DNA of 64,000 bases from Mytilus trossulus (lineage: Eukaryota): NCBI RefSeq assembly GCF_036588685.1, contig NC_086378.1:69998001-70062000 (forward strand), written 5' to 3'. The position numbers and the translations under genes are program-made. The first letter of the stretch is position 1, and every line of letters starts with the position of its first letter. This document shows, one piece after another, positions 20,976 to 64,000 of this stretch. The notes beneath the pieces were generated by a model. The model worked only from the letters and a program-made list of their open reading frames with translations, was not told where the DNA came from and made no database searches.

Positions 20976-22443
20976 GTAAGTATACGTTTTGACAATAATA
21001 TAATGAATAATTCGTTCAGAAAAGATTGAACTCAGAAAAAACTATTGAAAAAATCTGCATTTTTTATTGTTTATATTTTAAACAAATCTGTAATGGGTTT
21101 GTATCTTTTAATTGCCATACAAGTGGGAGTATTAGATTTCTATAAAACCAGGTTGAATCCCCATTTTCTACATAAGAAAATTCCTGTACCAAATTATGAA
21201 TATATCAGTTGTCATCCATTCATATGATGTTTTTGAGCTTTTGATTTTGCAATTGGCTAAAGGACTTCCGGTTTGGATTTTTTTCTCGGAGTTTGGTATC
21301 TTTGTTATTTAACCTTATTCAGACATTGGATGTTATTCAGGATCTTTACATTGGAAACATACTCATTATTCCTGTCAGTTTGTATATCCCTCAGCCGAGA
21401 AAACAAGTCAAACAATATAATTAATTCAGAAGAAAATACCGTTTAAATAAAAACTTTTATTTAGGCTTAGCAGGTAGTCATAATCATATATATACATATG
21501 TCAAGAATATAAGACAAATGAAATACAAAGTGATCATAGATTATAACTGACAAATAAACTAAATTAAAGAACTACTAAGTAGTATCTTCATAAATTTAAA
21601 GAATGAAGCATAACAAATTAAAAATTCTATGAAATACAAATGAAATATAAATTTCATACCCGCCTCGTACAAACATATTCCACCTTAAGGGAATGGGAGG
21701 GAGGGTTTTGAAAAAAGAACAAACGACGAAACACAATGCTCTTTAACAAATTGGCTACGCTGATAGAAGTTTCAACGACAAACTAAGACATATTTAAACA
21801 TAAAAATTCTAAATTATTAAAATGTTGACTACCTGTTTTCTGGTGTTTCTGAAAAGTGAAATTCAAAAGTGAGTTCTACTTTTAAATTGAATTTTTTATC
21901 CAATATAAATTACTGTACTGCGTGACCAATAAAAAACGAGTATAATTTAATTTAGAAAGCAGAGCAACTAAACCTTGACCAGATATGTGCTCACTGTTAA
22001 ATGAAGTGAGACCAATTGTCCATTTACCAGTTCACTAAATTGTTTTTCTGATTCTTCATTAATTAATCATTTTTAATCAAAAATTTACAAATTAATTCAG
22101 AAGAAAATACCGTTTAAATAAAAACTTTTATTTAGGCTTAGCAGGTAGTCATAATCATATATATATACATATGTCAAGAATATAATACAAATGAAATACA
22201 AAGTGATCATAGATTATAACTGACAAATAAACTAAATTAAAGAACTACTAAGTAGTATCTTCATAAATTTAAAGAATGAAGCATAACAAATTAAAAATTC
22301 TATGAAATACAAATGAAATATAAATTTCATACCCGCCAAACCGAAGGTCCGCCAAAAAAACAACAAATCACAGAAACTGCAAATTGCAACTTTTATAATA
22401 ATTCTAAAATAATAAGAAAGTAAGTCTACACCATCTTCTATAA

Positions 22444-22514
22444 TCCAAGTCGAGGACTCGAACCTCGATCCCCCATCACAAGGACAGGTGTACTAACCAT
22501 TGTACTAACAAGGA
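22444..22514 (-). ncRNA. tRNA-like cloverleaf (tRNA-Asp-like scaffold, altered anticodon loop) inside the Ngaro element
   Basis: TCCTTGT TA GTAC AATGGTTA GTAC A CCTGT CCTTGTG ATGGG GGAT CGAGG TTCGAGT CCTCG ACTTGGA (71 nt). D, anticodon and T stems fully pair; acceptor 5/7; Pol III A and B boxes present. Confidence 0.75.
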
Positions 22515-22705
22515 TGCATGATAGAGTCAACAGTGTAAACCCTCTAGAATAATAGAAAAACAGGATCAAAAATCTACTCTCTCTCATGCGGAGATTAAGA
22601 GTAAACCTTCTCCTAAAATTAAGCTGCAATTTACCAATATAATTTGATTTTTAAATTCTTAATCAAGTTTCAAACACAAATAAAATTCATTCTACCTTAA
22701 AGGAT

Positions 22706-23233
22706 TTAAACATGTGCAAGAGTATTAGCTATAAAGCTAAAAACCTTATTAAGACCAGTGGTGGACAAATTCAATTTGTCAACTGTAAACAAAGTGTTAA
22801 TTGGCTTTCTCACTCTACTATAAAAAGTCTTCTCACATTGCATGTATTTGACATCAGTTAGAGAGGAAGCCAGCTGTTTTAGTACATTGTTAAAATTAAT
22901 GACGAACAATTCAGACTGATTAAAATCACATGGTCTGGGTAATACAGAAGATAAGATAATAACACAATCTGGATTACAAATTCTCAATTCATGTATAATA
23001 TCACGAATGTATTTTTCAAATAACTTAGCATCTATATTAAATACAACATTTGTACCAACATGTACAATTATATTATTAAAATGGTACCAAGTGAATACCC
23101 TGTTTTTTAATTTCCTTAAAAGCATTTCACAACTCAGACCCCCAAAGGCCTGAAGTTGCGTATTCCTCATCTCTGGAAGATACTTTAAAATTGAATCTGA
23201 TATAACTAAACTGGGTTTACCCCATGCCTTCAA
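22706..23233 (-). CDS. SGNH/GDSL-type hydrolase ORF of the Ngaro element
   Basis: Block I ISDSIL, block III VHVGTN, SSVLPR, block V DKLNL (expected DxxH). Confidence 0.8.
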   Translation of the reverse strand: MKAWGKPSLVISDSILKYLPEMRNTQLQAFGGLSCEMLLRKLKNRVFTWYHFNNIIVHVGTNVVFNIDAKLFEKYIRDIIHELRICNPDCVIILSSVLPRPCDFNQSELFVINFNNVLKQLASSLTDVKYMQCEKTFYSRVRKPINTLFTVDKLNLSTTGLNKVFSFIANTLAHV

Positions 23234-23294: not shown

Positions 23295-24314
23295 TTACAG
23301 TCGACACATCATTTTTGACGAGACTTGCATCTTATCATTTAAACCATATCTAAGATACAATTTATAGGCGTCACTCTTCCAATCCCCTTGTAATTGAATG
23401 AGTTCAGAAGATACACCACATTGGAATGCCCAAGTTGCACCTCCTCTTCTGAAGCTATGAGAAGAATATTTTGTTGGATCTAACCCAATTTTCTCCACAA
23501 TGTTTTTCAAAAAAATCTGTAACATATTGTAGGACACTGGATTAGTTTTTCTACCAGATAAAACAAGAAAAGCTGGGGAAGATGCTAAAGCAGGAAATTT
23601 TGCGCACATGGCATTAAATGCACTAAAAGCACACAACGGAGAGGATAAATTTTTAACAATTGGTATTTCTAAAACTCTCTCCCCAAATTGTATAGTCTTA
23701 GACCAACAAAACTGAACTAGTAAATAATCTTCCAAAACTGAAATATTTTCTCTATGCAAACATTTAGAGCTATCATCTACTGTCCCAACCAAATTGGATT
23801 TTCTACAAATCAAATAGAAAGCAAAAAGAAAAATGCACCAATATGTGTAACTATTGATATCATCAAAATTTAATTCCTCCCTTATTTTTAATAAAATACT
23901 AGGTGTGATTGGAAGAGCTGCCCGAACTGTGTGAGGATTGCATCGTTTTAATCCCTTCATAAACAATCTAAAATAGAATGACTCAAAATGAATAAAAGGT
24001 AGATCAAAAAGTAAATGTAACACCTTAACTCCATTCAGATAATTTCTGATTGAGTCTACACTTTTGAATGATCTACTTAAAAATTGTGCAAACAAGCAAA
24101 GTGTATTTAACTCGCAAGGCAATGTCTTTAAATTATAAAAATGACAAAACAGGAAAAAGGCTTTCCACTGTATCTTTAAATTTTTTCTAGTTCCTGAAGC
24201 GTGTGCAGATTTCAAAGATTCTTGTGCTTGTGTTTTAAGCATGTGAAGATCTACAGATAAACTATGTTCACCAATTGTGACAGAATCTGAAAAAATTTGA
24301 ATCTGCATTAACAT
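23295..24314 (-). CDS. Tyrosine recombinase of the Ngaro element
   Basis: Catalytic set present: CRKSNL (R), SKT (K), HSFRRG (HxxR), GDW, AYKLY (Y). Confidence 0.93.
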   Translation of the reverse strand: MLMQIQIFSDSVTIGEHSLSVDLHMLKTQAQESLKSAHASGTRKNLKIQWKAFFLFCHFYNLKTLPCELNTLCLFAQFLSRSFKSVDSIRNYLNGVKVLHLLFDLPFIHFESFYFRLFMKGLKRCNPHTVRAALPITPSILLKIREELNFDDINSYTYWCIFLFAFYLICRKSNLVGTVDDSSKCLHRENISVLEDYLLVQFCWSKTIQFGERVLEIPIVKNLSSPLCAFSAFNAMCAKFPALASSPAFLVLSGRKTNPVSYNMLQIFLKNIVEKIGLDPTKYSSHSFRRGGATWAFQCGVSSELIQLQGDWKSDAYKLYLRYGLNDKMQVSSKMMCRL

Positions 24315-25977
24315 GTTGAATATTTCTACCTTCTATTGCTTCATAAAACTGCACAGAGTAACTATCTGACAAACTCCATCTGGACAACATATCTGGTAAC
24401 CTATTCTCAATACCGTCTATATGAATAGCTCTTAATTCACATTCTTTAATTGCACAAATAAAACATATTTCTCTAAGACAAGCTTGTAAAAAACGACTCC
24501 TTGATTTCCCTTGATTGATAACTTGAACTGAAACCATATTGTCACACTGAATACATATCTTTCTGCCTCTTTGTCCCCACAATTTCAAACACACAATAAC
24601 TGACAATAATTCCAAAGCATTTATATGTAAGCTTTGCTGTACAATGAAATCTGGAAACACACAGTGAAAAAACTGTCCATTTGAAACTCCTCCACAACCT
24701 ACCAAACATGCATCTGAAGCCATATACTCGTCTGGTTCTGTCCACTCTTGAAGATTTAACAGTGAAACACCATTATATATCTCCAAGAATTCTGACCACC
24801 AGAGAAGATCATGCTTCAATTCCTCGGAAACCTCTAAAATACAATTCTCATTTTTAAACTCCCTAAGAAAATTTAAAATTCTTGATATAAAAATACGACC
24901 TGGTCGAACACAACTAGCAATAAAATTCAGTTTTCCTATTAAGGACTGTACTTCTTTTAAAGATGCTGTGTCTTTGTTTAACCAAAATGAAACTAAGTCA
25001 AAAATCTCCAATAATCTATCAGGAGTAACTTCCATAGTCATTTTTTCCGTATCAAACCAGACACCTAAAAAACTCATTCTGTAAGAAGGACTACTCGCTT
25101 TCTTTACAGATTCTTCCAAACCACAGCTATCTAAAACCCATTTCAATTTTGTATATGAAATATCTGCTTTTTCACTTATTTCAGCACCAGCAAAATCATC
25201 TAAATAATTTGTCAAAGATATTTCATGCTTTTTGGCTATAAATCTGACAGCATTAGTCACTGACTGACAAATAAAAGCACTAGATTTTAAACCCATAGGT
25301 AAAACTCTATCAATAAAAAAATGACCTTTCCAGGTAAAACCAATTAAATTATAATCTTTTGGATCTACTGGAAATTGTCTATACGCTCTGCGCAAGTCCC
25401 TTTTAAAAATTTTACAGAATTTCCCTTTTTCTTTAATAATTTCAATAAAATTATCCACATTAGGATAATGTAGTTCTATATGTTTACCTAAATAAACATT
25501 TTTATCAATTCCATCATTGACAGATTTGCCCTTCGGAAAACTCAAATCCATGATAACTCTCCTTTCTTCCGAGTTTGCCTTTGGCACAGAATTCAAAGGA
25601 GATATTACCAAAAGATCATTAAACGGGTTTGATGCAAAAGGACCTAGTACGGCACCATAGCCTACCTCCTTTTTAATATATTTATCAATCTCTTTGGCAA
25701 AATTTCTTGCCCCAGTATGATTTTTGACAATTTTACTGTTTCCAAATTCTTCAAATTTTCTATCAAAACCTAAAGGCCAACCAAATTCTAACATATCACA
25801 GATTTCTTGATCGTTATAATCAAATAATTCTTGTCTCCAAAACTTAATACATAATTTAGAATAAACTGGAACTTTAAATAAATCAAAATTATATCCTGGA
25901 ACGCCAATGAAGGAATTGTGCAAATTCAAAAACAAATTTTGTTCTGGTAAAATAACTTCAAAAACTGCAATACACAA
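24268..25977 (-). CDS. Reverse transcriptase / RNase H of the Ngaro element
   Basis: RRVIMDLS, DLRRAYRQ, LPMGL, YLDDF; RNase H SDAC, HINALEL, CDN. Overlaps the YR ORF by 47 nt. True start is uncertain. Confidence 0.95.
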   Translation of the reverse strand: MCIAVFEVILPEQNLFLNLHNSFIGVPGYNFDLFKVPVYSKLCIKFWRQELFDYNDQEICDMLEFGWPLGFDRKFEEFGNSKIVKNHTGARNFAKEIDKYIKKEVGYGAVLGPFASNPFNDLLVISPLNSVPKANSEERRVIMDLSFPKGKSVNDGIDKNVYLGKHIELHYPNVDNFIEIIKEKGKFCKIFKRDLRRAYRQFPVDPKDYNLIGFTWKGHFFIDRVLPMGLKSSAFICQSVTNAVRFIAKKHEISLTNYLDDFAGAEISEKADISYTKLKWVLDSCGLEESVKKASSPSYRMSFLGVWFDTEKMTMEVTPDRLLEIFDLVSFWLNKDTASLKEVQSLIGKLNFIASCVRPGRIFISRILNFLREFKNENCILEVSEELKHDLLWWSEFLEIYNGVSLLNLQEWTEPDEYMASDACLVGCGGVSNGQFFHCVFPDFIVQQSLHINALELLSVIVCLKLWGQRGRKICIQCDNMVSVQVINQGKSRSRFLQACLREICFICAIKECELRAIHIDGIENRLPDMLSRWSLSDSYSVQFYEAIEGRNIQHVNADSNFFRFCHNW

Positions 25978-26016: not shown

Positions 26017-27551
26017 TCAGGCTTTTTTATTTGGGCAATTGTCTGAACACTCCGGGTGTGTTTTTTGGATATGTTCTTTTTGCCAACATGAAGCACATAT
26101 GTGATGCACAGTTCTTGTTAAACCTCTAATAACTGTAGTGTGAGTTGAGTTGCTGTGCTCACATTTATTGCGTTGATACTTAACACAAAACCAAATTTGC
26201 TCTTTACCATTCTGGTTTTTGGACACTGATCTAAAATTGGCTTGCCGCACTTCTTTTGGCAAACTTTGTCCACTTAACATAACATTTTCCAAAATCTGTG
26301 AGTCATCAGACCAAGTTTTTCTACCTAATTCAATTAATCTTAACCAAGCGGCGTAAAATTCTAAAACCGATGCCCAGTTATAAATGGAGCTAAAGTATGC
26401 GATTTTCTGTAATAATTTTAAACGTCCTTCTTTTTCCAATTTATTTTTGCAGAAATTATTTATAATTTCAAGTTCACCTGCAACAAGCATTTTAAAATGC
26501 AATTGCTTAAACTCCAAATCTTTACTCACATACTCATATTGTAAAAAATTATGTGGAAAAGACTGTGGATTTATAACTTTATCTGCAGATTTTATTTTAA
26601 GTCCTGACTTTAACTTTTTACTCTTTTTCCTTGATGATAATTTCGCTGACAATTCATAATCAGATGAATCCTCAGAGCTGGAATTTGAACTTGTTTCAGA
26701 TTCAGACTCGGTACTACTGTTCACTCTCAATACAGATTCAGGCAACTGTACTACCTTCTGAGATTTAGAATCCAAATGTTTTTCTTATGTTGAGTAGTTT
26801 AAGAAATAGAACCCTTAGCTAAATTCATTTTTTTTAATTGCTGCAATAACTCTTGTTCATTTGTTACTTTTTCGCTTTTAAATTTCACATTTTTCTCTTT
26901 TGAAGTTTCAGCGAGCTCGGACTTTCCACTAAATTTAGTGTCAAAATCCAAACCTAACCTCTTCAATTCATCATTAACCTCTTTATTTAATTTATCATTA
27001 GCTCTTAAATTTGTTAAAGTGATCTCACCCTTTGATTTCTTTGATTTCTTTTTGGGCTTTTCTTCTGATTTTGATAGCCCATCCACTTTCGCCTCTTATT
27101 CTGTGATACGTTGGTTGAGCTGCTCCCTCTTGAGTCTTTGTTTCTTTTCTTCTAATAGCTTAACTCTTAATTCCAGCTCTTCATCGGACTCCCGAGGTTT
27201 CAACTCTTCACACTCTTTGCTATTTTTCTTGAGGGGCGTGATGAATATCAATGCTGCGGCCTCATTTATCTTATTATTCTCATCATCTGACATAAGATCA
27301 AGCATGTCATCTTCCTCTGCATGCAGTTCTAATTCATCCCGATCTGAGTTATTATCGGCCATTTTCTGAAATACATACTCATATGCCATGTCATCTATAC
27401 CAGACGTTCCAAAATTATTAAATTTTTTATAGTCTATTATCGCGACTTTTCTCTTAATAGGACGATTCATAACTAACGAAAAATTAAATACAAGTAACAA
27501 AAGCTGTACAAATCTCAACGACGACAACAAGCGTTGATAAAAATTGAACAA
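26017..27551 (-). pseudogene. Gag-like ORF1 of the Ngaro element, broken by one in-frame stop and a frameshift
   Basis: Segments 27551-27096 and 27086-26799 share a frame across a TAA; 26775-26017 is in another frame and ends in a Cys/His-rich region (CVKYQRNKC...HHICASC...HPECSDNC). Confidence 0.75.
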
Positions 27552-28644
27552 ACGACGAAATGCTCAAGTTGAATAAATACTATATATAATTCGCTACATA
27601 AACGATGATTCTTTCTGAAGAAATGAACAAACGACGAAAAGCTCAAATCAAATCAAGAATAACTTTTGAAAAAAGAACAAACGACGAAACACAATGTTCT
27701 TTAACAAATTGGCTACGCTGATAGAAGTTTCAACGACAAACTAAGACATATTTAAACATAAAAATTCTAAATTATTAAAATGTTGACTACCTGTTTTCTG
27801 GTGTTTCTGAAAAGTGAAATTCAAAAGTGAGTTCTACTTTTAAATTGAATTTTTTATCCAATATAAATTACTGTACTGCGTGACCAATAAAAAACGAGTT
27901 TAATTTAATTTAGAAAGCAGAGCAACTAAACCTTGACCAGATATGTGCTCACTGTTAAATGAAGTGAAACCAATTGTCCATTTACCAGTTCACTAAATTG
28001 TTTTTCTGATTCTTCATTAATTAATCATTTTTAATCAAAAATTTACAAAATACTGTCTTATCAAAAAAGGATTGCAGTTGCCGTTTCGTCATCTGTTTAT
28101 ACAGCATGTATGACGTCTATTAAGATTATTGATTTCTATTCTTATAATAAAACAAATATTTAAAAAAACAAAATTGTAATACAAACTTTTTAGTGGCAAT
28201 ACTACATATATAATTTAAATAGTGCATGATAACAGTAGAAAGTTTATCAACAAAATCAACACAAATACCAATATTTGATTCTTTGATTAATTTGACAAAC
28301 TTAAGAAAATATTATAATAGTAATAAACATAGACAGTCTAAATGGTGAAGATATTTTTATTACTGAAATGTTTACTTGTATGTGGTTATTGTACAAGCTT
28401 GAGCCGGCAAGAGTACTCTCGTTAGGTTGCTTTATTTGTATGAAATATTATTTTTTTCAATTAATAAATTGCCCTTAAAGACAGTGTTCTAAAGCTGTAA
28501 TATTTTAAGATTGTTCACTTCTTTTTTTATCAGTATATTCAATATTCAGTTTATCCTATGATGTAGTTTCTTATGTAGTTTATATTAAATTGTGCTGCAG
28601 CTGCATTCTTTACAATTTAATAGCAGGATTTAGTTTTTCTTCAG

Positions 28645-58609: not shown

Positions 58610-58653
58610 ACACCAGACGCTCGTTTCGTCTTCATAAGACTCATCAGTGACGC
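58610..58653 (-). ncRNA. Minimal type I hammerhead ribozyme with intact core
   Basis: GCGTCA-CTGATGA-GTC-ttatgaa-GAC-GAAA-C-gagc-G-TC^TGGTGT. Confidence 0.85.
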
Positions 58654-63535: not shown

Positions 63536-64000
63536 TATATACAACTCGTCTAAACATCAACCCAACAATGTTAGATCTGTAAATTTGCTTTCGCAAATTT
63601 TTGGTTCTTCCCTCGCCGGGATTCGAACCCATGCTACTGTGATATCGTGACACCAAATTGCCTGCACTGCAGCCGTACCGCTAGACCACACGACCACCTG
63701 GGCTCTTAAAAAATAGAGCCTTCGCTGGCCGTGTGTTACCTTTCCACGTCAGTTTTAATCTAGCGGCGTACTGCAGTACATGATATATAAGGCATGAAGA
63801 TGTTATTGTTACAGATCAGCTAAATAATCTATAGTAAAGGATCCTACAAATTAATGTAAGATACAGTCACAGAAAATAATTATATTTATAAGTACGTCTG
63901 AGTCAGTGACAACCCTACAACAGATGTATCCATCGAATCGCCATCAATGATGGTGATACATGGCTGTGTACATAAAGTATATACAACTCGTCTAAACATC
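63536..64000 (-). repeat. 442-bp-period tandem repeat with a tRNA-derived Pol III head; a fragment also at ~16217-16365
   Basis: ACAACTCGTCTAAACATC at 63541 and 63983; on - A box TGGTCGTGTGG and B box GGTTCGAATCC. Confidence 0.7.

What the first reader, a model, noticed from the sequence alone, without database searches (positions are those of the whole stretch)
22444..22514. A tyrosine-recombinase retrotransposon carries its own tRNA-like cloverleaf
Seen: between the hydrolase ORF and repeat B1, on the element's sense strand, is a 71-nt sequence with exact tRNA arm spacing. It has D stem GTAC/GTAC, anticodon stem CCTGT/ATGGG (two G-U), T stem CGAGG/CCTCG around TTCGAGT, an acceptor stem with two U-U mismatches, and A and B boxes. 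From memory it aligns without gaps to metazoan tRNA-Asp (TCCTCGTTAGTAT...CGGGGTTCGATTCCCCGACGGGGA). Stem changes keep pairing (G-C to A-T in the T stem), while the anticodon loop (CCTTGTG, nominal TTG, no U33) is rewritten. There is no SINE body, tail or target duplication. Established: DIRS/Ngaro elements have no tRNA primer-binding site and their priming is not well resolved. Inference: the fold, not decoding, has been kept. It could be a Pol III transcript running into the B1-A2 junction, an RNase P/Z processing signal, or an RT-recruiting or priming element. I did not spot a complementary PBS in the element.
Basis: partly seen in the sequence, partly recalled or inferred. Interest (0 to 1): 0.9.

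Follow-up and report, generated by a model that had tools for sequence, protein, structure and literature searches.

The report
Borrowed tRNA-like module in a Ngaro retrotransposon
A mussel Ngaro retrotransposon really does carry a tRNA-shaped sequence derived from tRNA-Asp in its 3' untranslated region, but it is an add-on specific to this family, shared with a few Crypton-like transposons, and not a general Ngaro priming device.

Summary
ARAGORN and Rfam (37.6 bits, cut-off 29) both call a 71-nt cloverleaf at 22514-22444 on the sense (minus) strand of an intact Ngaro element, between the GDSL-hydrolase ORF and repeat B1. It descends from this genome's tRNA-Asp(GTC). It cannot decode.

All sibling copies that cover the region carry it. 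It is absent from 20 loci of related hydrolase-bearing Ngaro families, so it is a family-specific acquisition.

Homologous modules occur elsewhere:
- antisense inside a CryptonA-like transposon family
- at the same relative place in a diverged Crypton-like relic
- in a 2-kb non-coding relative
- at single-copy sites

Only about 20 copies exist genome-wide, so there is no large SINE family.

Across four lineages the arms stay paired. The anticodon arm is rewritten yet stays a 5-6-bp hairpin, with three double compensatory changes. A 12-21-bp leader-trailer stalk flanks the cloverleaf, and folding favours the sense strand in three of four.

There is no complementary primer-binding site. A T4 run would stop Pol III 69 nt before B1.

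Best reading: a captured, RNA-level tRNA-like module.

The scan has not reported this before on other DNA.

The parts
22444..22514 (-). 71-nt tRNA-like cloverleaf derived from tRNA-Asp(GTC). The discriminator base is 22443.
   Evidence: ARAGORN. Rfam RF00005 at 37.6 bits. Own covariance model R1 at 95.6 bits. Gapless alignment to the genome's tRNA-Asp.
22497..22507 (-). A-box-like motif TAGTACAATGG, tRNA positions 8-18.
   Evidence: Read from the sequence. This block is nearly invariant across the four lineages.
22454..22464 (-). B box GGTTCGAGTCC, a perfect match to the consensus.
   Evidence: Read from the sequence. Conserved across lineages.
22521..22542 (-). 5' (leader) strand of the stalk: outer helix 22542-22529 and inner helix 22525-22521.
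   Evidence: Minimum-free-energy fold. An equivalent stalk flanks the tRNA-like in L011 (21 bp), L016 (about 20 bp in three segments) and L012 (12 bp, unrelated sequence).
22422..22441 (-). 3' (trailer) strand of the stalk: inner helix 22441-22437 and outer helix 22435-22422. Six of the 14 outer pairs are G-U.
   Evidence: Fold. The sense strand folds at -37.7 kcal/mol and the antisense strand at -23.2 kcal/mol.
22406..22409 (-). First TTTT run on the sense strand after the tRNA-like, 34 nt past the discriminator. It is a Pol III terminator-like signal.
   Evidence: Read from the sequence.
22543..22558 (-). Upstream copy of an imperfect direct repeat that abuts the module.
   Evidence: Local alignment, 16 of 17 positions with one gap. 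The limits of homology to the other families, 22540 and 22418, were found independently.
22403..22419 (-). Downstream copy of the same direct repeat. It may be a target-site duplication, but this is not established.
   Evidence: An equal score arises in 3-6% of AT-rich controls before abutment is required. In the family's older state the match is 14 of 17.
22706..23233 (-). Last ORF of the element, a GDSL-type hydrolase of 175 aa.
   Evidence: ORF list. Homologues P0001-P0007 carry PF13472.
23295..24314 (-). Tyrosine recombinase ORF.
   Evidence: PF00589, E = 1.9e-5, just under Pfam's cut-off.
24268..25977 (-). Reverse transcriptase / RNase H ORF.
   Evidence: PF00078, E = 3.7e-10. A weak RVT_3 match as well.
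26017..27551 (-). Two upstream ORFs (27551-27096 and 26775-26017) with no Pfam match. They are presumed gag-like.
27664..27963 (-). Repeat A1.
   Evidence: 99% identical to A2.
22090..22337 (-). Repeat B1.
   Evidence: 98-99% identical to B2.
21706..22005 (-). Repeat A2.
21419..21664 (-). Repeat B2, the 3' end of the element.

Best explanation
The 71-nt cloverleaf is the core of a module of about 123 nt (22542-22420): a tRNA-Asp(GTC)-derived, non-decoding tRNA-like structure sitting on a leader-trailer stalk.

Origin. The module belongs to a small, old family of about 20 copies in this genome. Other members live inside CryptonA-like tyrosine-recombinase DNA transposons, in a probable non-autonomous relative of them, and at a few single-copy sites. 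The ancestor of this one Ngaro family acquired a copy in its 3' UTR, possibly as an insertion with a 16-17-nt duplication. The module has been copied as part of the element ever since.

What is kept. The RNA fold on the sense strand and the A and B boxes are kept. The anticodon is not.

How it most likely works (inferred, not shown). In the element's long sense transcript the tRNA-like elbow and the acceptor/T helix are recognised by the host's tRNA-processing enzymes. RNase P would cut at 22515/22514 and RNase Z after 22443, in the manner of MALAT1 and mascRNA. This would release a small tRNA-like RNA and separate the coding part from the B1-A2-B2 part.

It is not a primer, it is not a general Ngaro device, and it may be dispensable for transposition.

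My odds: origin and identity about 0.85; some RNA-level activity about 0.35-0.4.
For: Shown:
1. tRNA-like calls by two programs.
2. Descent from the genome's tRNA-Asp: 42 of 61 positions gapless, compensatory changes in the acceptor, D and T stems, and the displaced hexamer CCTGTC.
3. Presence in all sibling copies that span the site. L002, L003 and L005 are identical. L007 has one change, C-G to U-G. L006 and L004 are decayed.
4. Absence from 20 loci of related Ngaro families. The spacer between the hydrolase stop and B1 varies from 17 to 400 nt in them.
5. Homologous modules that pass Rfam's tRNA cut-off in L011 (45.4 bits), L016 (43.2) and L012 (39.1). L012 lies in a DUF3504 Crypton-like element.
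6. A diverged Crypton-like relic in L023 (46-65% amino-acid identity) has a tRNA-like at the same relative place and in the same orientation.
7. The L016 family shares two colinear non-coding pieces with the Crypton-like element.
8. Only 14 exact pattern matches exist in 1.3 Gb.
9. Fold retention: 90% of cells paired against 36-54% when slid; three double changes; the anticodon helix varies at 5 of 6 pairs yet is 97% paired. Identity outside the anticodon arm is 80-89%, and inside it 25-70%.
10. A stalk is present in all four lineages. Fold z-scores are -6.1, -4.1, -2.9 and -1.1. The sense fold is 7-14 kcal/mol more stable than the antisense fold in three of four.
11. Within the Ngaro family, L006 and L007 share about 9 fixed differences in 162 nt of upstream UTR and none in the 123-nt module. 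L007 differs at 1 of 72 tRNA-like positions against 12% overall.

Inferred: acquisition from the Crypton-associated pool. The window's core is closest to L012, while its stalk matches L011 and L016.
Against: - No expression or end-mapping data could be obtained, so processing is pure inference.
- The window's version is the weakest fold of the four: z = -1.1, two U-U mismatches in the acceptor stem, and the minimum-free-energy fold does not form the acceptor. That would weaken recognition by RNase P and RNase Z.
- Cleavage there would sever the RNA upstream of B1-A2-B2, which the accepted replication model needs in the template. Efficient processing would therefore cost the element.
- Covariation rests on four lineages only, and most changes are transitions through wobble pairs.
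- The conservation signal within the family rests on two or three old copies.
- In the Crypton-like elements the module is antisense to the recombinase gene, which does not fit a role in the element's main transcript.
- The flanking direct repeat is only weakly significant.
Confidence: 0.5

Rival explanations
1. Inert passenger. A tRNA-derived insert landed in the 3' UTR of the family's ancestor and is copied with it. It has no activity at the RNA or DNA level, and its good state only reflects the family's youth.
For: - It is family-specific.
- A possible target duplication flanks it.
- The young copies are 97-99% identical overall, so an intact module is expected in them anyway.
- Dead copies L006 and L004 decay at about the background rate.
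- The window's fold is the weakest of the four.
Against: - The module is the least diverged stretch in the L007 comparison: 5 differences in 131 nt against 12% overall.
- It shows no fixed difference between subfamilies, whereas the neighbouring UTR shows about 9.
- The arms stay paired through compensatory change across lineages that differ by 20-25%.
- The same module persists at the same place in two diverged Crypton-like elements.
Confidence: 0.22
2. A DNA-level element. Either an internal Pol III / TFIIIC unit that makes a short RNA or acts as a chromatin barrier for the transposon, or a folded or cruciform site used by the tyrosine recombinases of the elements that carry it.
For: - The B box is perfect, the A box is near-consensus, and both are the most conserved blocks across lineages.
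- A TTTT run follows within 34 nt here, and within about 25 nt in L016.
- At least 14 of about 22 copies lie in elements that encode a tyrosine recombinase, in either orientation.
- Five structural breakpoints in sibling copies cluster in 22391-22509.
Against: - L011 and L012 have no T4 run within 60 nt.
- The stalk's 5' strand lies upstream of any expected Pol III start.
- As a DNA inverted repeat the window's stalk matches at only 8 of 14 positions, but as RNA it pairs at 14 of 14 through G-U pairs.
- Element ends are at A1 and B2, not at the module.
Confidence: 0.13
3. An exapted replication element of the Ngaro: a site that recruits the reverse transcriptase or primes cDNA synthesis, in the manner of a genomic tag.
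For: - Sense-strand position just upstream of B1-A2, the part thought to template end-joining.
- Relative conservation within the family.
- Two 5'-truncated copies start inside the tRNA-like, at 22492 and 22504. This would fit cDNA synthesis stalling there.
Against: - Related Ngaro families with the same gene set lack it, so it cannot be required by the mechanism.
- No complementary stretch of 9 nt or more, and no site for its 3' end, exists in the element.
- It lies 1,024 nt from the 3' end, not at the end.
- Homologues sit in DNA transposons that have no reverse transcriptase.
Confidence: 0.08
4. A working tRNA gene (tRNA-Gln-UUG, as ARAGORN labels it) that happens to lie in the element.
For: ARAGORN and Rfam call it a tRNA.
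Against: - No U33 and a pyrimidine at position 37.
- Two U-U mismatches in the acceptor stem.
- 37.6 bits is only 8.6 bits above the cut-off of 29.
- The body derives from tRNA-Asp, not tRNA-Gln.
- Relatives have 3-4-nt anticodon loops.
Confidence: 0.01

Closest known systems
Helenus / TRIMp3 and Cassandra: non-autonomous LTR retrotransposons with a tRNA-like or 5S-like sequence (PMC10886601)
   Same: A small-RNA-gene-derived sequence with Pol III boxes is carried as a heritable part of a retroelement. These are found in bivalves too, and are proposed to arise when a SINE-like sequence inserts into the element.
   Different: In those elements the tRNA-like lies in the LTRs of short non-coding elements and is thought to drive the template transcript. 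Here it lies in the 3' UTR of an autonomous tyrosine-recombinase element, outside the terminal repeats. It has a flanking stalk, and a T4 run would stop Pol III before the repeats.
tRNA-derived SINEs of bivalves (PMC11481361)
   Same: A tRNA-related head with A and B boxes, and possible flanking target duplication.
   Different: No body, no LINE-derived tail, no poly-A or microsatellite end. There are about 20 copies rather than thousands. A leader of about 28 nt lies upstream of the tRNA-like.
MALAT1-mascRNA and MEN-beta tRNA-like elements (from my own knowledge)
   Same: A non-decoding cloverleaf embedded in a long Pol II transcript. The elbow and the acceptor/T helix are kept and the anticodon arm is shortened. 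This is the mechanistic model I favour.
   Different: Those lie at the mature 3' end of host non-coding RNAs, and their cleavage is demonstrated. Here the host is a transposon, the site is internal, and cleavage is untested.
3'-terminal tRNA-like structures of plant RNA viruses and the Mauriceville retroplasmid (from my own knowledge)
   Same: A replicating element carries a tRNA mimic. In Mauriceville the reverse transcriptase starts at it.
   Different: Those structures are at the very 3' end and end in CCA. This one is 1 kb internal, has no encoded CCA, and is absent from sister families.
Ngaro group of DIRS-order retrotransposons (Goodwin and Poulter 2004, as summarised in PMC13465315)
   Same: The host element has RT/RH, a tyrosine recombinase, a GDSL hydrolase and split direct repeats A1...B1-A2-B2.
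   Different: The searched literature describes no tRNA-like part for this group.

Membership tests
tRNA (Rfam RF00005) | Cloverleaf scoring above the family's gathering score | tested here: met
   37.6 bits against 29, with all 71 model positions matched. Relatives score 35-45 bits.
tRNA (functional, decoding) | 7-nt anticodon loop with U33 and a purine at position 37, and a fully paired acceptor stem | tested here: not met
   The loop is CCTTGTG, with C33 and T37. Alternatively it is a 5-nt loop on a 6-bp stem. The acceptor stem has two U-U mismatches.
tRNA-derived SINE | tRNA-related head with A and B boxes | tested here: met
   The B box is perfect and the A box is near-consensus.
tRNA-derived SINE | Body plus LINE-derived, poly-A or microsatellite tail | tested here: not met
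   Homology among members ends within about 25-55 nt of the tRNA-like on either side. No tail is present.
tRNA-derived SINE | Many dispersed copies with target-site duplications | tested here: not met
   14 exact pattern matches and about 22 detectable copies in 1.3 Gb, most of them inside other repeats. One possible duplication is seen, at this site only.
Ngaro (tyrosine-recombinase retrotransposon), for the host element | RT/RH plus tyrosine recombinase, and split direct repeats A1...B1-A2-B2 | tested here: met
   PF00078 at E = 3.7e-10 and PF00589 at E = 1.9e-5, the latter slightly under Pfam's cut-off. Repeats A and B are 98-99% identical and in the Ngaro order.
Helenus / TRIMp3 | tRNA-like sequence inside the terminal repeats of a short non-coding LTR element | tested here: not met
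   The module lies outside A and B, in a 6.5-kb coding element.
3'-terminal tRNA-like structure (viral or retroplasmid type) | tRNA mimic at the extreme 3' end of the replicated RNA | tested here: not met
   1,024 nt separate it from the end of B2.
RNase P/Z-processed embedded tRNA-like element (mascRNA type) | Cleavage at the 5' and 3' ends of the cloverleaf in vivo | not testable with these tools
CryptonA-like element, for the host of the L012 module | DUF3504-type tyrosine recombinase with no reverse transcriptase | tested here: met
   PF12012 at E = 6e-30. The ORF blocks include HxxR and GH...Y motifs. No match to the Ngaro RT.

The most novel reading that the evidence does not exclude
The stalked tRNA-like is a cis-acting module shared by tyrosine-recombinase mobile elements of two classes: Crypton-like DNA transposons with their non-autonomous relative, and one Ngaro retrotransposon. 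It is kept because it does something in their life cycle. It might be a structure that RNase P/Z processing turns into a small tRNA-like RNA plus a leader-trailer duplex, or a folded single-strand site handled by the recombinase.
Probability: 0.15. Interest if true: 0.75.

Novelty: new variant of a known kind. Interest (0 to 1): 0.45.

Why it matters
If the module is only a captured passenger, it is a tidy example of how retroelements pick up small-RNA-gene fragments. It would extend the Helenus/Cassandra theme to an autonomous tyrosine-recombinase element, and it is a caution for tRNA gene annotation in mussel genomes.

If the fold is used, it would be the first tRNA mimic described in DIRS-order or Crypton elements. 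It would be a shared structured module between a retrotransposon and DNA transposons that have only the recombinase in common.

It does not resolve how Ngaro elements prime reverse transcription, because sister families lack it.

Tried and rejected
Tools that gave no data:
Homologues of the hydrolase at 49-71% identity exist in Logan/ENA data, but their contigs could not be read.
Three further module-like places could not be read: C3:27448458, C3:27627498 and C14:81009518.
- One metagenome pattern scan found nothing.

Ideas tested and dropped:
- A non-autonomous Ngaro origin for the L016 family: it has no split direct repeats.
- A primer-binding site for the tRNA-like's 3' end: the best complementarity is 13 of 22.
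- MITE reading: as DNA the terminal inverted repeat is only 8 of 14, and L012's flanks are unrelated.
- Empty-site evidence for mobility of the module: none found.
- Literature: no paper pairs Ngaro with 'tRNA-like'. The DIRS + tyrosine recombinase + tRNA-like search and the Crypton + tRNA search turned up no description of such a module among the listed titles and the paper I opened.
- The neighbouring note of a 'tRNA-headed tandem repeat' at 63536-64000: cmscan at E<=1 gives no tRNA match there, so I drew no link.

The only model built is a covariance model of the 71-nt tRNA-like.

Full report
**The observation.** On the minus strand at 22514-22444 there is a 71-nt sequence that two independent programs call a tRNA. 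ARAGORN reports 22442-22515 with nominal anticodon ttg. Rfam RF00005 scores 37.6 bits against a gathering score of 29, with all model positions matched and E = 2.6e-4 for the whole 64-kb window. It is the only such match in the window.

- The acceptor is TCCTTGT/ACTTGGA with two U-U mismatches.
- The D stem is GTAC/GTAC.
- The anticodon stem is CCTGT/ATGGG, with two G-U pairs.
- The T stem is CGAGG/CCTCG around TTCGAGT.
- The anticodon stem can extend by one C-G pair, giving 6 bp around a 5-nt loop.
- There is no U33, and position 37 is a pyrimidine, so the sequence cannot decode.

**The host element.** The surrounding element is on the minus strand and has the Ngaro layout.

| Part | Coordinates | Evidence |
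|---|---|---|
| A1 | 27963-27664 | |
| Two ORFs without Pfam match | 27551-26017 | |
| RT/RH | 25977-24268 | PF00078, E = 3.7e-10 |
| Tyrosine recombinase | 24314-23295 | PF00589, E = 1.9e-5 |
| GDSL-type hydrolase | 23233-22706 | homologues carry PF13472 |
| tRNA-like | 22514-22444 | |
| B1 | 22337-22090 | |
| A2 | 22005-21706 | |
| B2 | 21664-21419 | |

The repeats are 98-99% identical, so the insertion is young. The cloverleaf is on the sense strand, 190 nt after the last stop codon and 106 nt before B1.

**Origin from tRNA-Asp.** The genome's own tRNA-Asp(GTC) is present in about 127 arrayed copies on C5 and C14.

- It aligns to the tRNA-like without gaps at 42 of 61 positions, and at 34 of 44 outside the anticodon arm (my count).
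- Relative to tRNA-Asp, both G-U pairs of the D stem have become G-C.
- One T-stem pair has changed from G-C to A-U on both sides.
- In the L011 and L016 versions, two acceptor pairs have changed on both sides.
- The hexamer CCTGTC holds U33 and the GTC anticodon of tRNA-Asp. It is still present, but 4 nt further 5', where it now forms the 5' strand of the new hairpin. The arm was therefore remodelled by offsetting indels.

**Is it part of the element?** A search of the whole assembly with 22720-22338 finds nine copies of this family.

- L002, L003 and L005 carry an identical tRNA-like.
- L007, a subfamily copy 12% diverged, has one change, which keeps pairing (C-G to U-G).
- L006 has six changes that break pairs.
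- L004 has a 12-nt deletion in the D arm.
- L008 and L009 are fragments whose homology begins inside the tRNA-like.

So the module is inherited with the family.

The module is also the least diverged part of the L007 comparison, with 5 differences in 131 nt against 12.2% overall. L006 and L007 share about nine fixed differences from the window in the 162 nt of UTR upstream, and none in the 123-nt module. This hints at constraint in active lineages, but it rests on very few copies.

**Is it a general Ngaro feature?** It is not.

- The hydrolase protein finds at least 123 related ORFs in the genome, at 27-43% identity.
- In 20 such loci, each with 1.5 kb of flank, ARAGORN finds no tRNA and Rfam gives no match at E<=1.
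- A covariance model built from the tRNA-like itself gives nothing better than 10 bits in them.
- In six of these loci examined for repeats, B1 begins 17 to about 400 nt after the hydrolase stop.

The cloverleaf is therefore an acquisition of one lineage. It says nothing about how Ngaro elements in general prime reverse transcription.

**Relatives outside the Ngaro.** The same searches found homologous tRNA-like sequences in other repeats. All pass Rfam's tRNA cut-off: L011 at 45.4 bits, L016 at 43.2 and L012 at 39.1. Only 14 places in 1.3 Gb match a pattern of the shared 5' half plus T loop. About 22 places are detectable by similarity. There is no large SINE family.

- **L012-L015.** These are four 99%-identical copies of a 5.75-kb element. 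Its ORFs are on the opposite strand and include a DUF3504 tyrosine recombinase (PF12012, E = 6e-30), so it is CryptonA-like. The tRNA-like lies antisense, in the gap between the N-terminal ORF block and the block with the HxxR motif.
- **A relic in L023.** This diverged Crypton-like relic has 46-65% amino-acid identity and colinear DNA matches. It has a further tRNA-like (L023:1611-1686, 42 bits to my model) at the same relative place and in the same orientation. The module was therefore already in the common ancestor of these two.
- **L016-L019.** This is a repeat of about 2 kb without a recombinase ORF. It shares two colinear non-coding pieces with the Crypton-like element: a 135-nt palindrome and the tRNA-like. 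It looks like a non-autonomous relative.
- **L011.** This is a single copy.

The Ngaro shares nothing but the 72 nt with these elements. Its core is closest to L012, with the same acceptor and D-arm variant. Its flanks match L011 and L016. I infer that the Ngaro drew its copy from this pool.

**Evidence that the fold is kept.** I aligned six sequences from four lineages and counted pairs on the cloverleaf.

- 90% of pair cells are standard pairs, against 36-54% when the partners are slid.
- Three pairs change on both sides.
- The anticodon helix varies at five of six pairs and is 97% paired.
- Outside the anticodon arm the lineages are 80-89% identical. Inside it they are 25-70% identical. Yet each keeps a 5-6-bp hairpin with a loop of 3-5 nt.
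- The elbow nucleotides (T8, A14, G18-G19, the TTC of the T loop and A58) are invariant.

The sample is small, and most changes are transitions through wobble pairs. This is moderate evidence, not strong evidence.

**A stalk around the cloverleaf.** In all four lineages the leader and the trailer pair with each other.

| Lineage | Stalk | Fold z-score | Sense / antisense energy (kcal/mol) |
|---|---|---|---|
| Window | 14 bp + 5 bp (22542-22521 with 22441-22422) | -1.1 | -37.7 / -23.2 |
| L011 | 21 bp; the fold also forms a complete cloverleaf | -6.1 | -48.1 / -34.7 |
| L016 | about 20 bp in three segments | -4.1 | -33.2 / -36.6 |
| L012 | 12 bp of unrelated sequence | -2.9 | -34.5 / -27.6 |

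Between L011/L016 and the window, one stalk pair flips from A-T to T-A. Six of the window's 14 outer pairs are G-U. As a DNA inverted repeat the window's stalk matches at only 8 of 14 positions. This favours an RNA structure on the sense strand over a DNA-level terminal inverted repeat.

The window's own version is the weakest fold of the four. Its minimum-free-energy structure does not form the mismatched acceptor stem.

**How the module got there.** Homology to the other lineages spans 22540-22418. Directly outside lie two copies of an imperfect repeat, at 22558-22543 and 22419-22403, matching at 16 of 17 positions with one gap. An equal score occurs in 3-6% of AT-rich controls before abutment is required. 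In the family's older state the match is 14 of 17. A few bases of it also resemble L011's flanks. I treat a target-site duplication as possible, not shown.

- *Pol III read-through into B1-A2.* The first TTTT on the sense strand is at 22409-22406, 34 nt past the discriminator and 69 nt before B1. A Pol III transcript would end there.
- *Priming.* No stretch of 9 nt or more complementary to the tRNA-like exists elsewhere in the element. The best match to its 3' end plus CCA is 13 of 22.
- *RNase P/Z signal.* This remains the most natural activity for a nuclear RNA with an intact elbow and an acceptor/T helix. It could not be tested. It would also cut the template upstream of the repeats.

- A metagenome pattern scan found nothing.
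- The literature searches found no description of a tRNA-like in Ngaro or DIRS elements; for Cryptons I checked only the listed titles and one paper.
- The nearest published case is Helenus/TRIMp3: tRNA-like sequences in the LTRs of non-autonomous LTR elements, including bivalve ones (PMC10886601).

**Verdict.** It is wrong in scope. This is a lineage-specific, captured module shared with Crypton-like transposons, and not Ngaro's own priming device. Its function is inferred only.

Noticed in passing
L008:1601-1674 and L009:1610-1679 (window equivalents 22492 and 22504); also window 22391-22400 and 22498-22509: Structural breakpoints of sibling copies cluster at the module. Two fragments begin inside the D arm of the tRNA-like. 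L004 has a 12-nt deletion in the D arm. L005 has a 4.2-kb insertion at 22395-22400. L007 has a deletion that starts at 22390. That is five breakpoints within about 120 nt of a 6.5-kb element, and I have no explanation for it.
   Followed up: partly
G000 C5:18438997-18542695 and C14:68059524-68085550: Genuine tRNA-Asp(GTC) genes stand in long tandem arrays, about 127 copies in all. The periods are about 1399 and 1258 bp on C5 and about 650 bp on C14. A few variants occur in the arrays.
   Followed up: no
L039/L040 (C6:65334500-65340260), L021/L038, L041/L042: A 5.75-kb CryptonA-like element is present in four 99%-identical copies. Its DUF3504 recombinase is split into ORF blocks, with open frames up to 428 aa. 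It contains several long palindromes, and inverted copies of its right end lie inside it.
   Followed up: partly
L012:1063-1223: A repeat of about 170 bp nested in the Crypton-like element is very abundant in the genome. There were 754 first-look candidates, and the scored hits were 78-80% identical.
   Followed up: no
L022:26-802 (minus strand): An ORF of 258 aa lies downstream of the L016-family module. It has a CxC...CxH motif like a SWIM zinc finger and a tail that resembles the start of a YqaJ-type exonuclease domain. It has no Pfam match at E<=0.01, and it runs off the locus.
   Followed up: no
window 58610-58653 (minus strand): There is a type I hammerhead match just below Rfam's cut-off (26.7 bits against 34). 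This fits the neighbouring note on retrozymes.
   Followed up: no
window 63536-64000: The 'tRNA-headed tandem repeat' noted by the first stage gives no tRNA match with cmscan at E<=1, and none with ARAGORN.
   Followed up: partly
L020:8721-9846: The single-copy L011 module is followed about 190 nt downstream by a tandem array with a period of about 140-160 nt. Other satellite-like repeats lie upstream of it.
   Followed up: no
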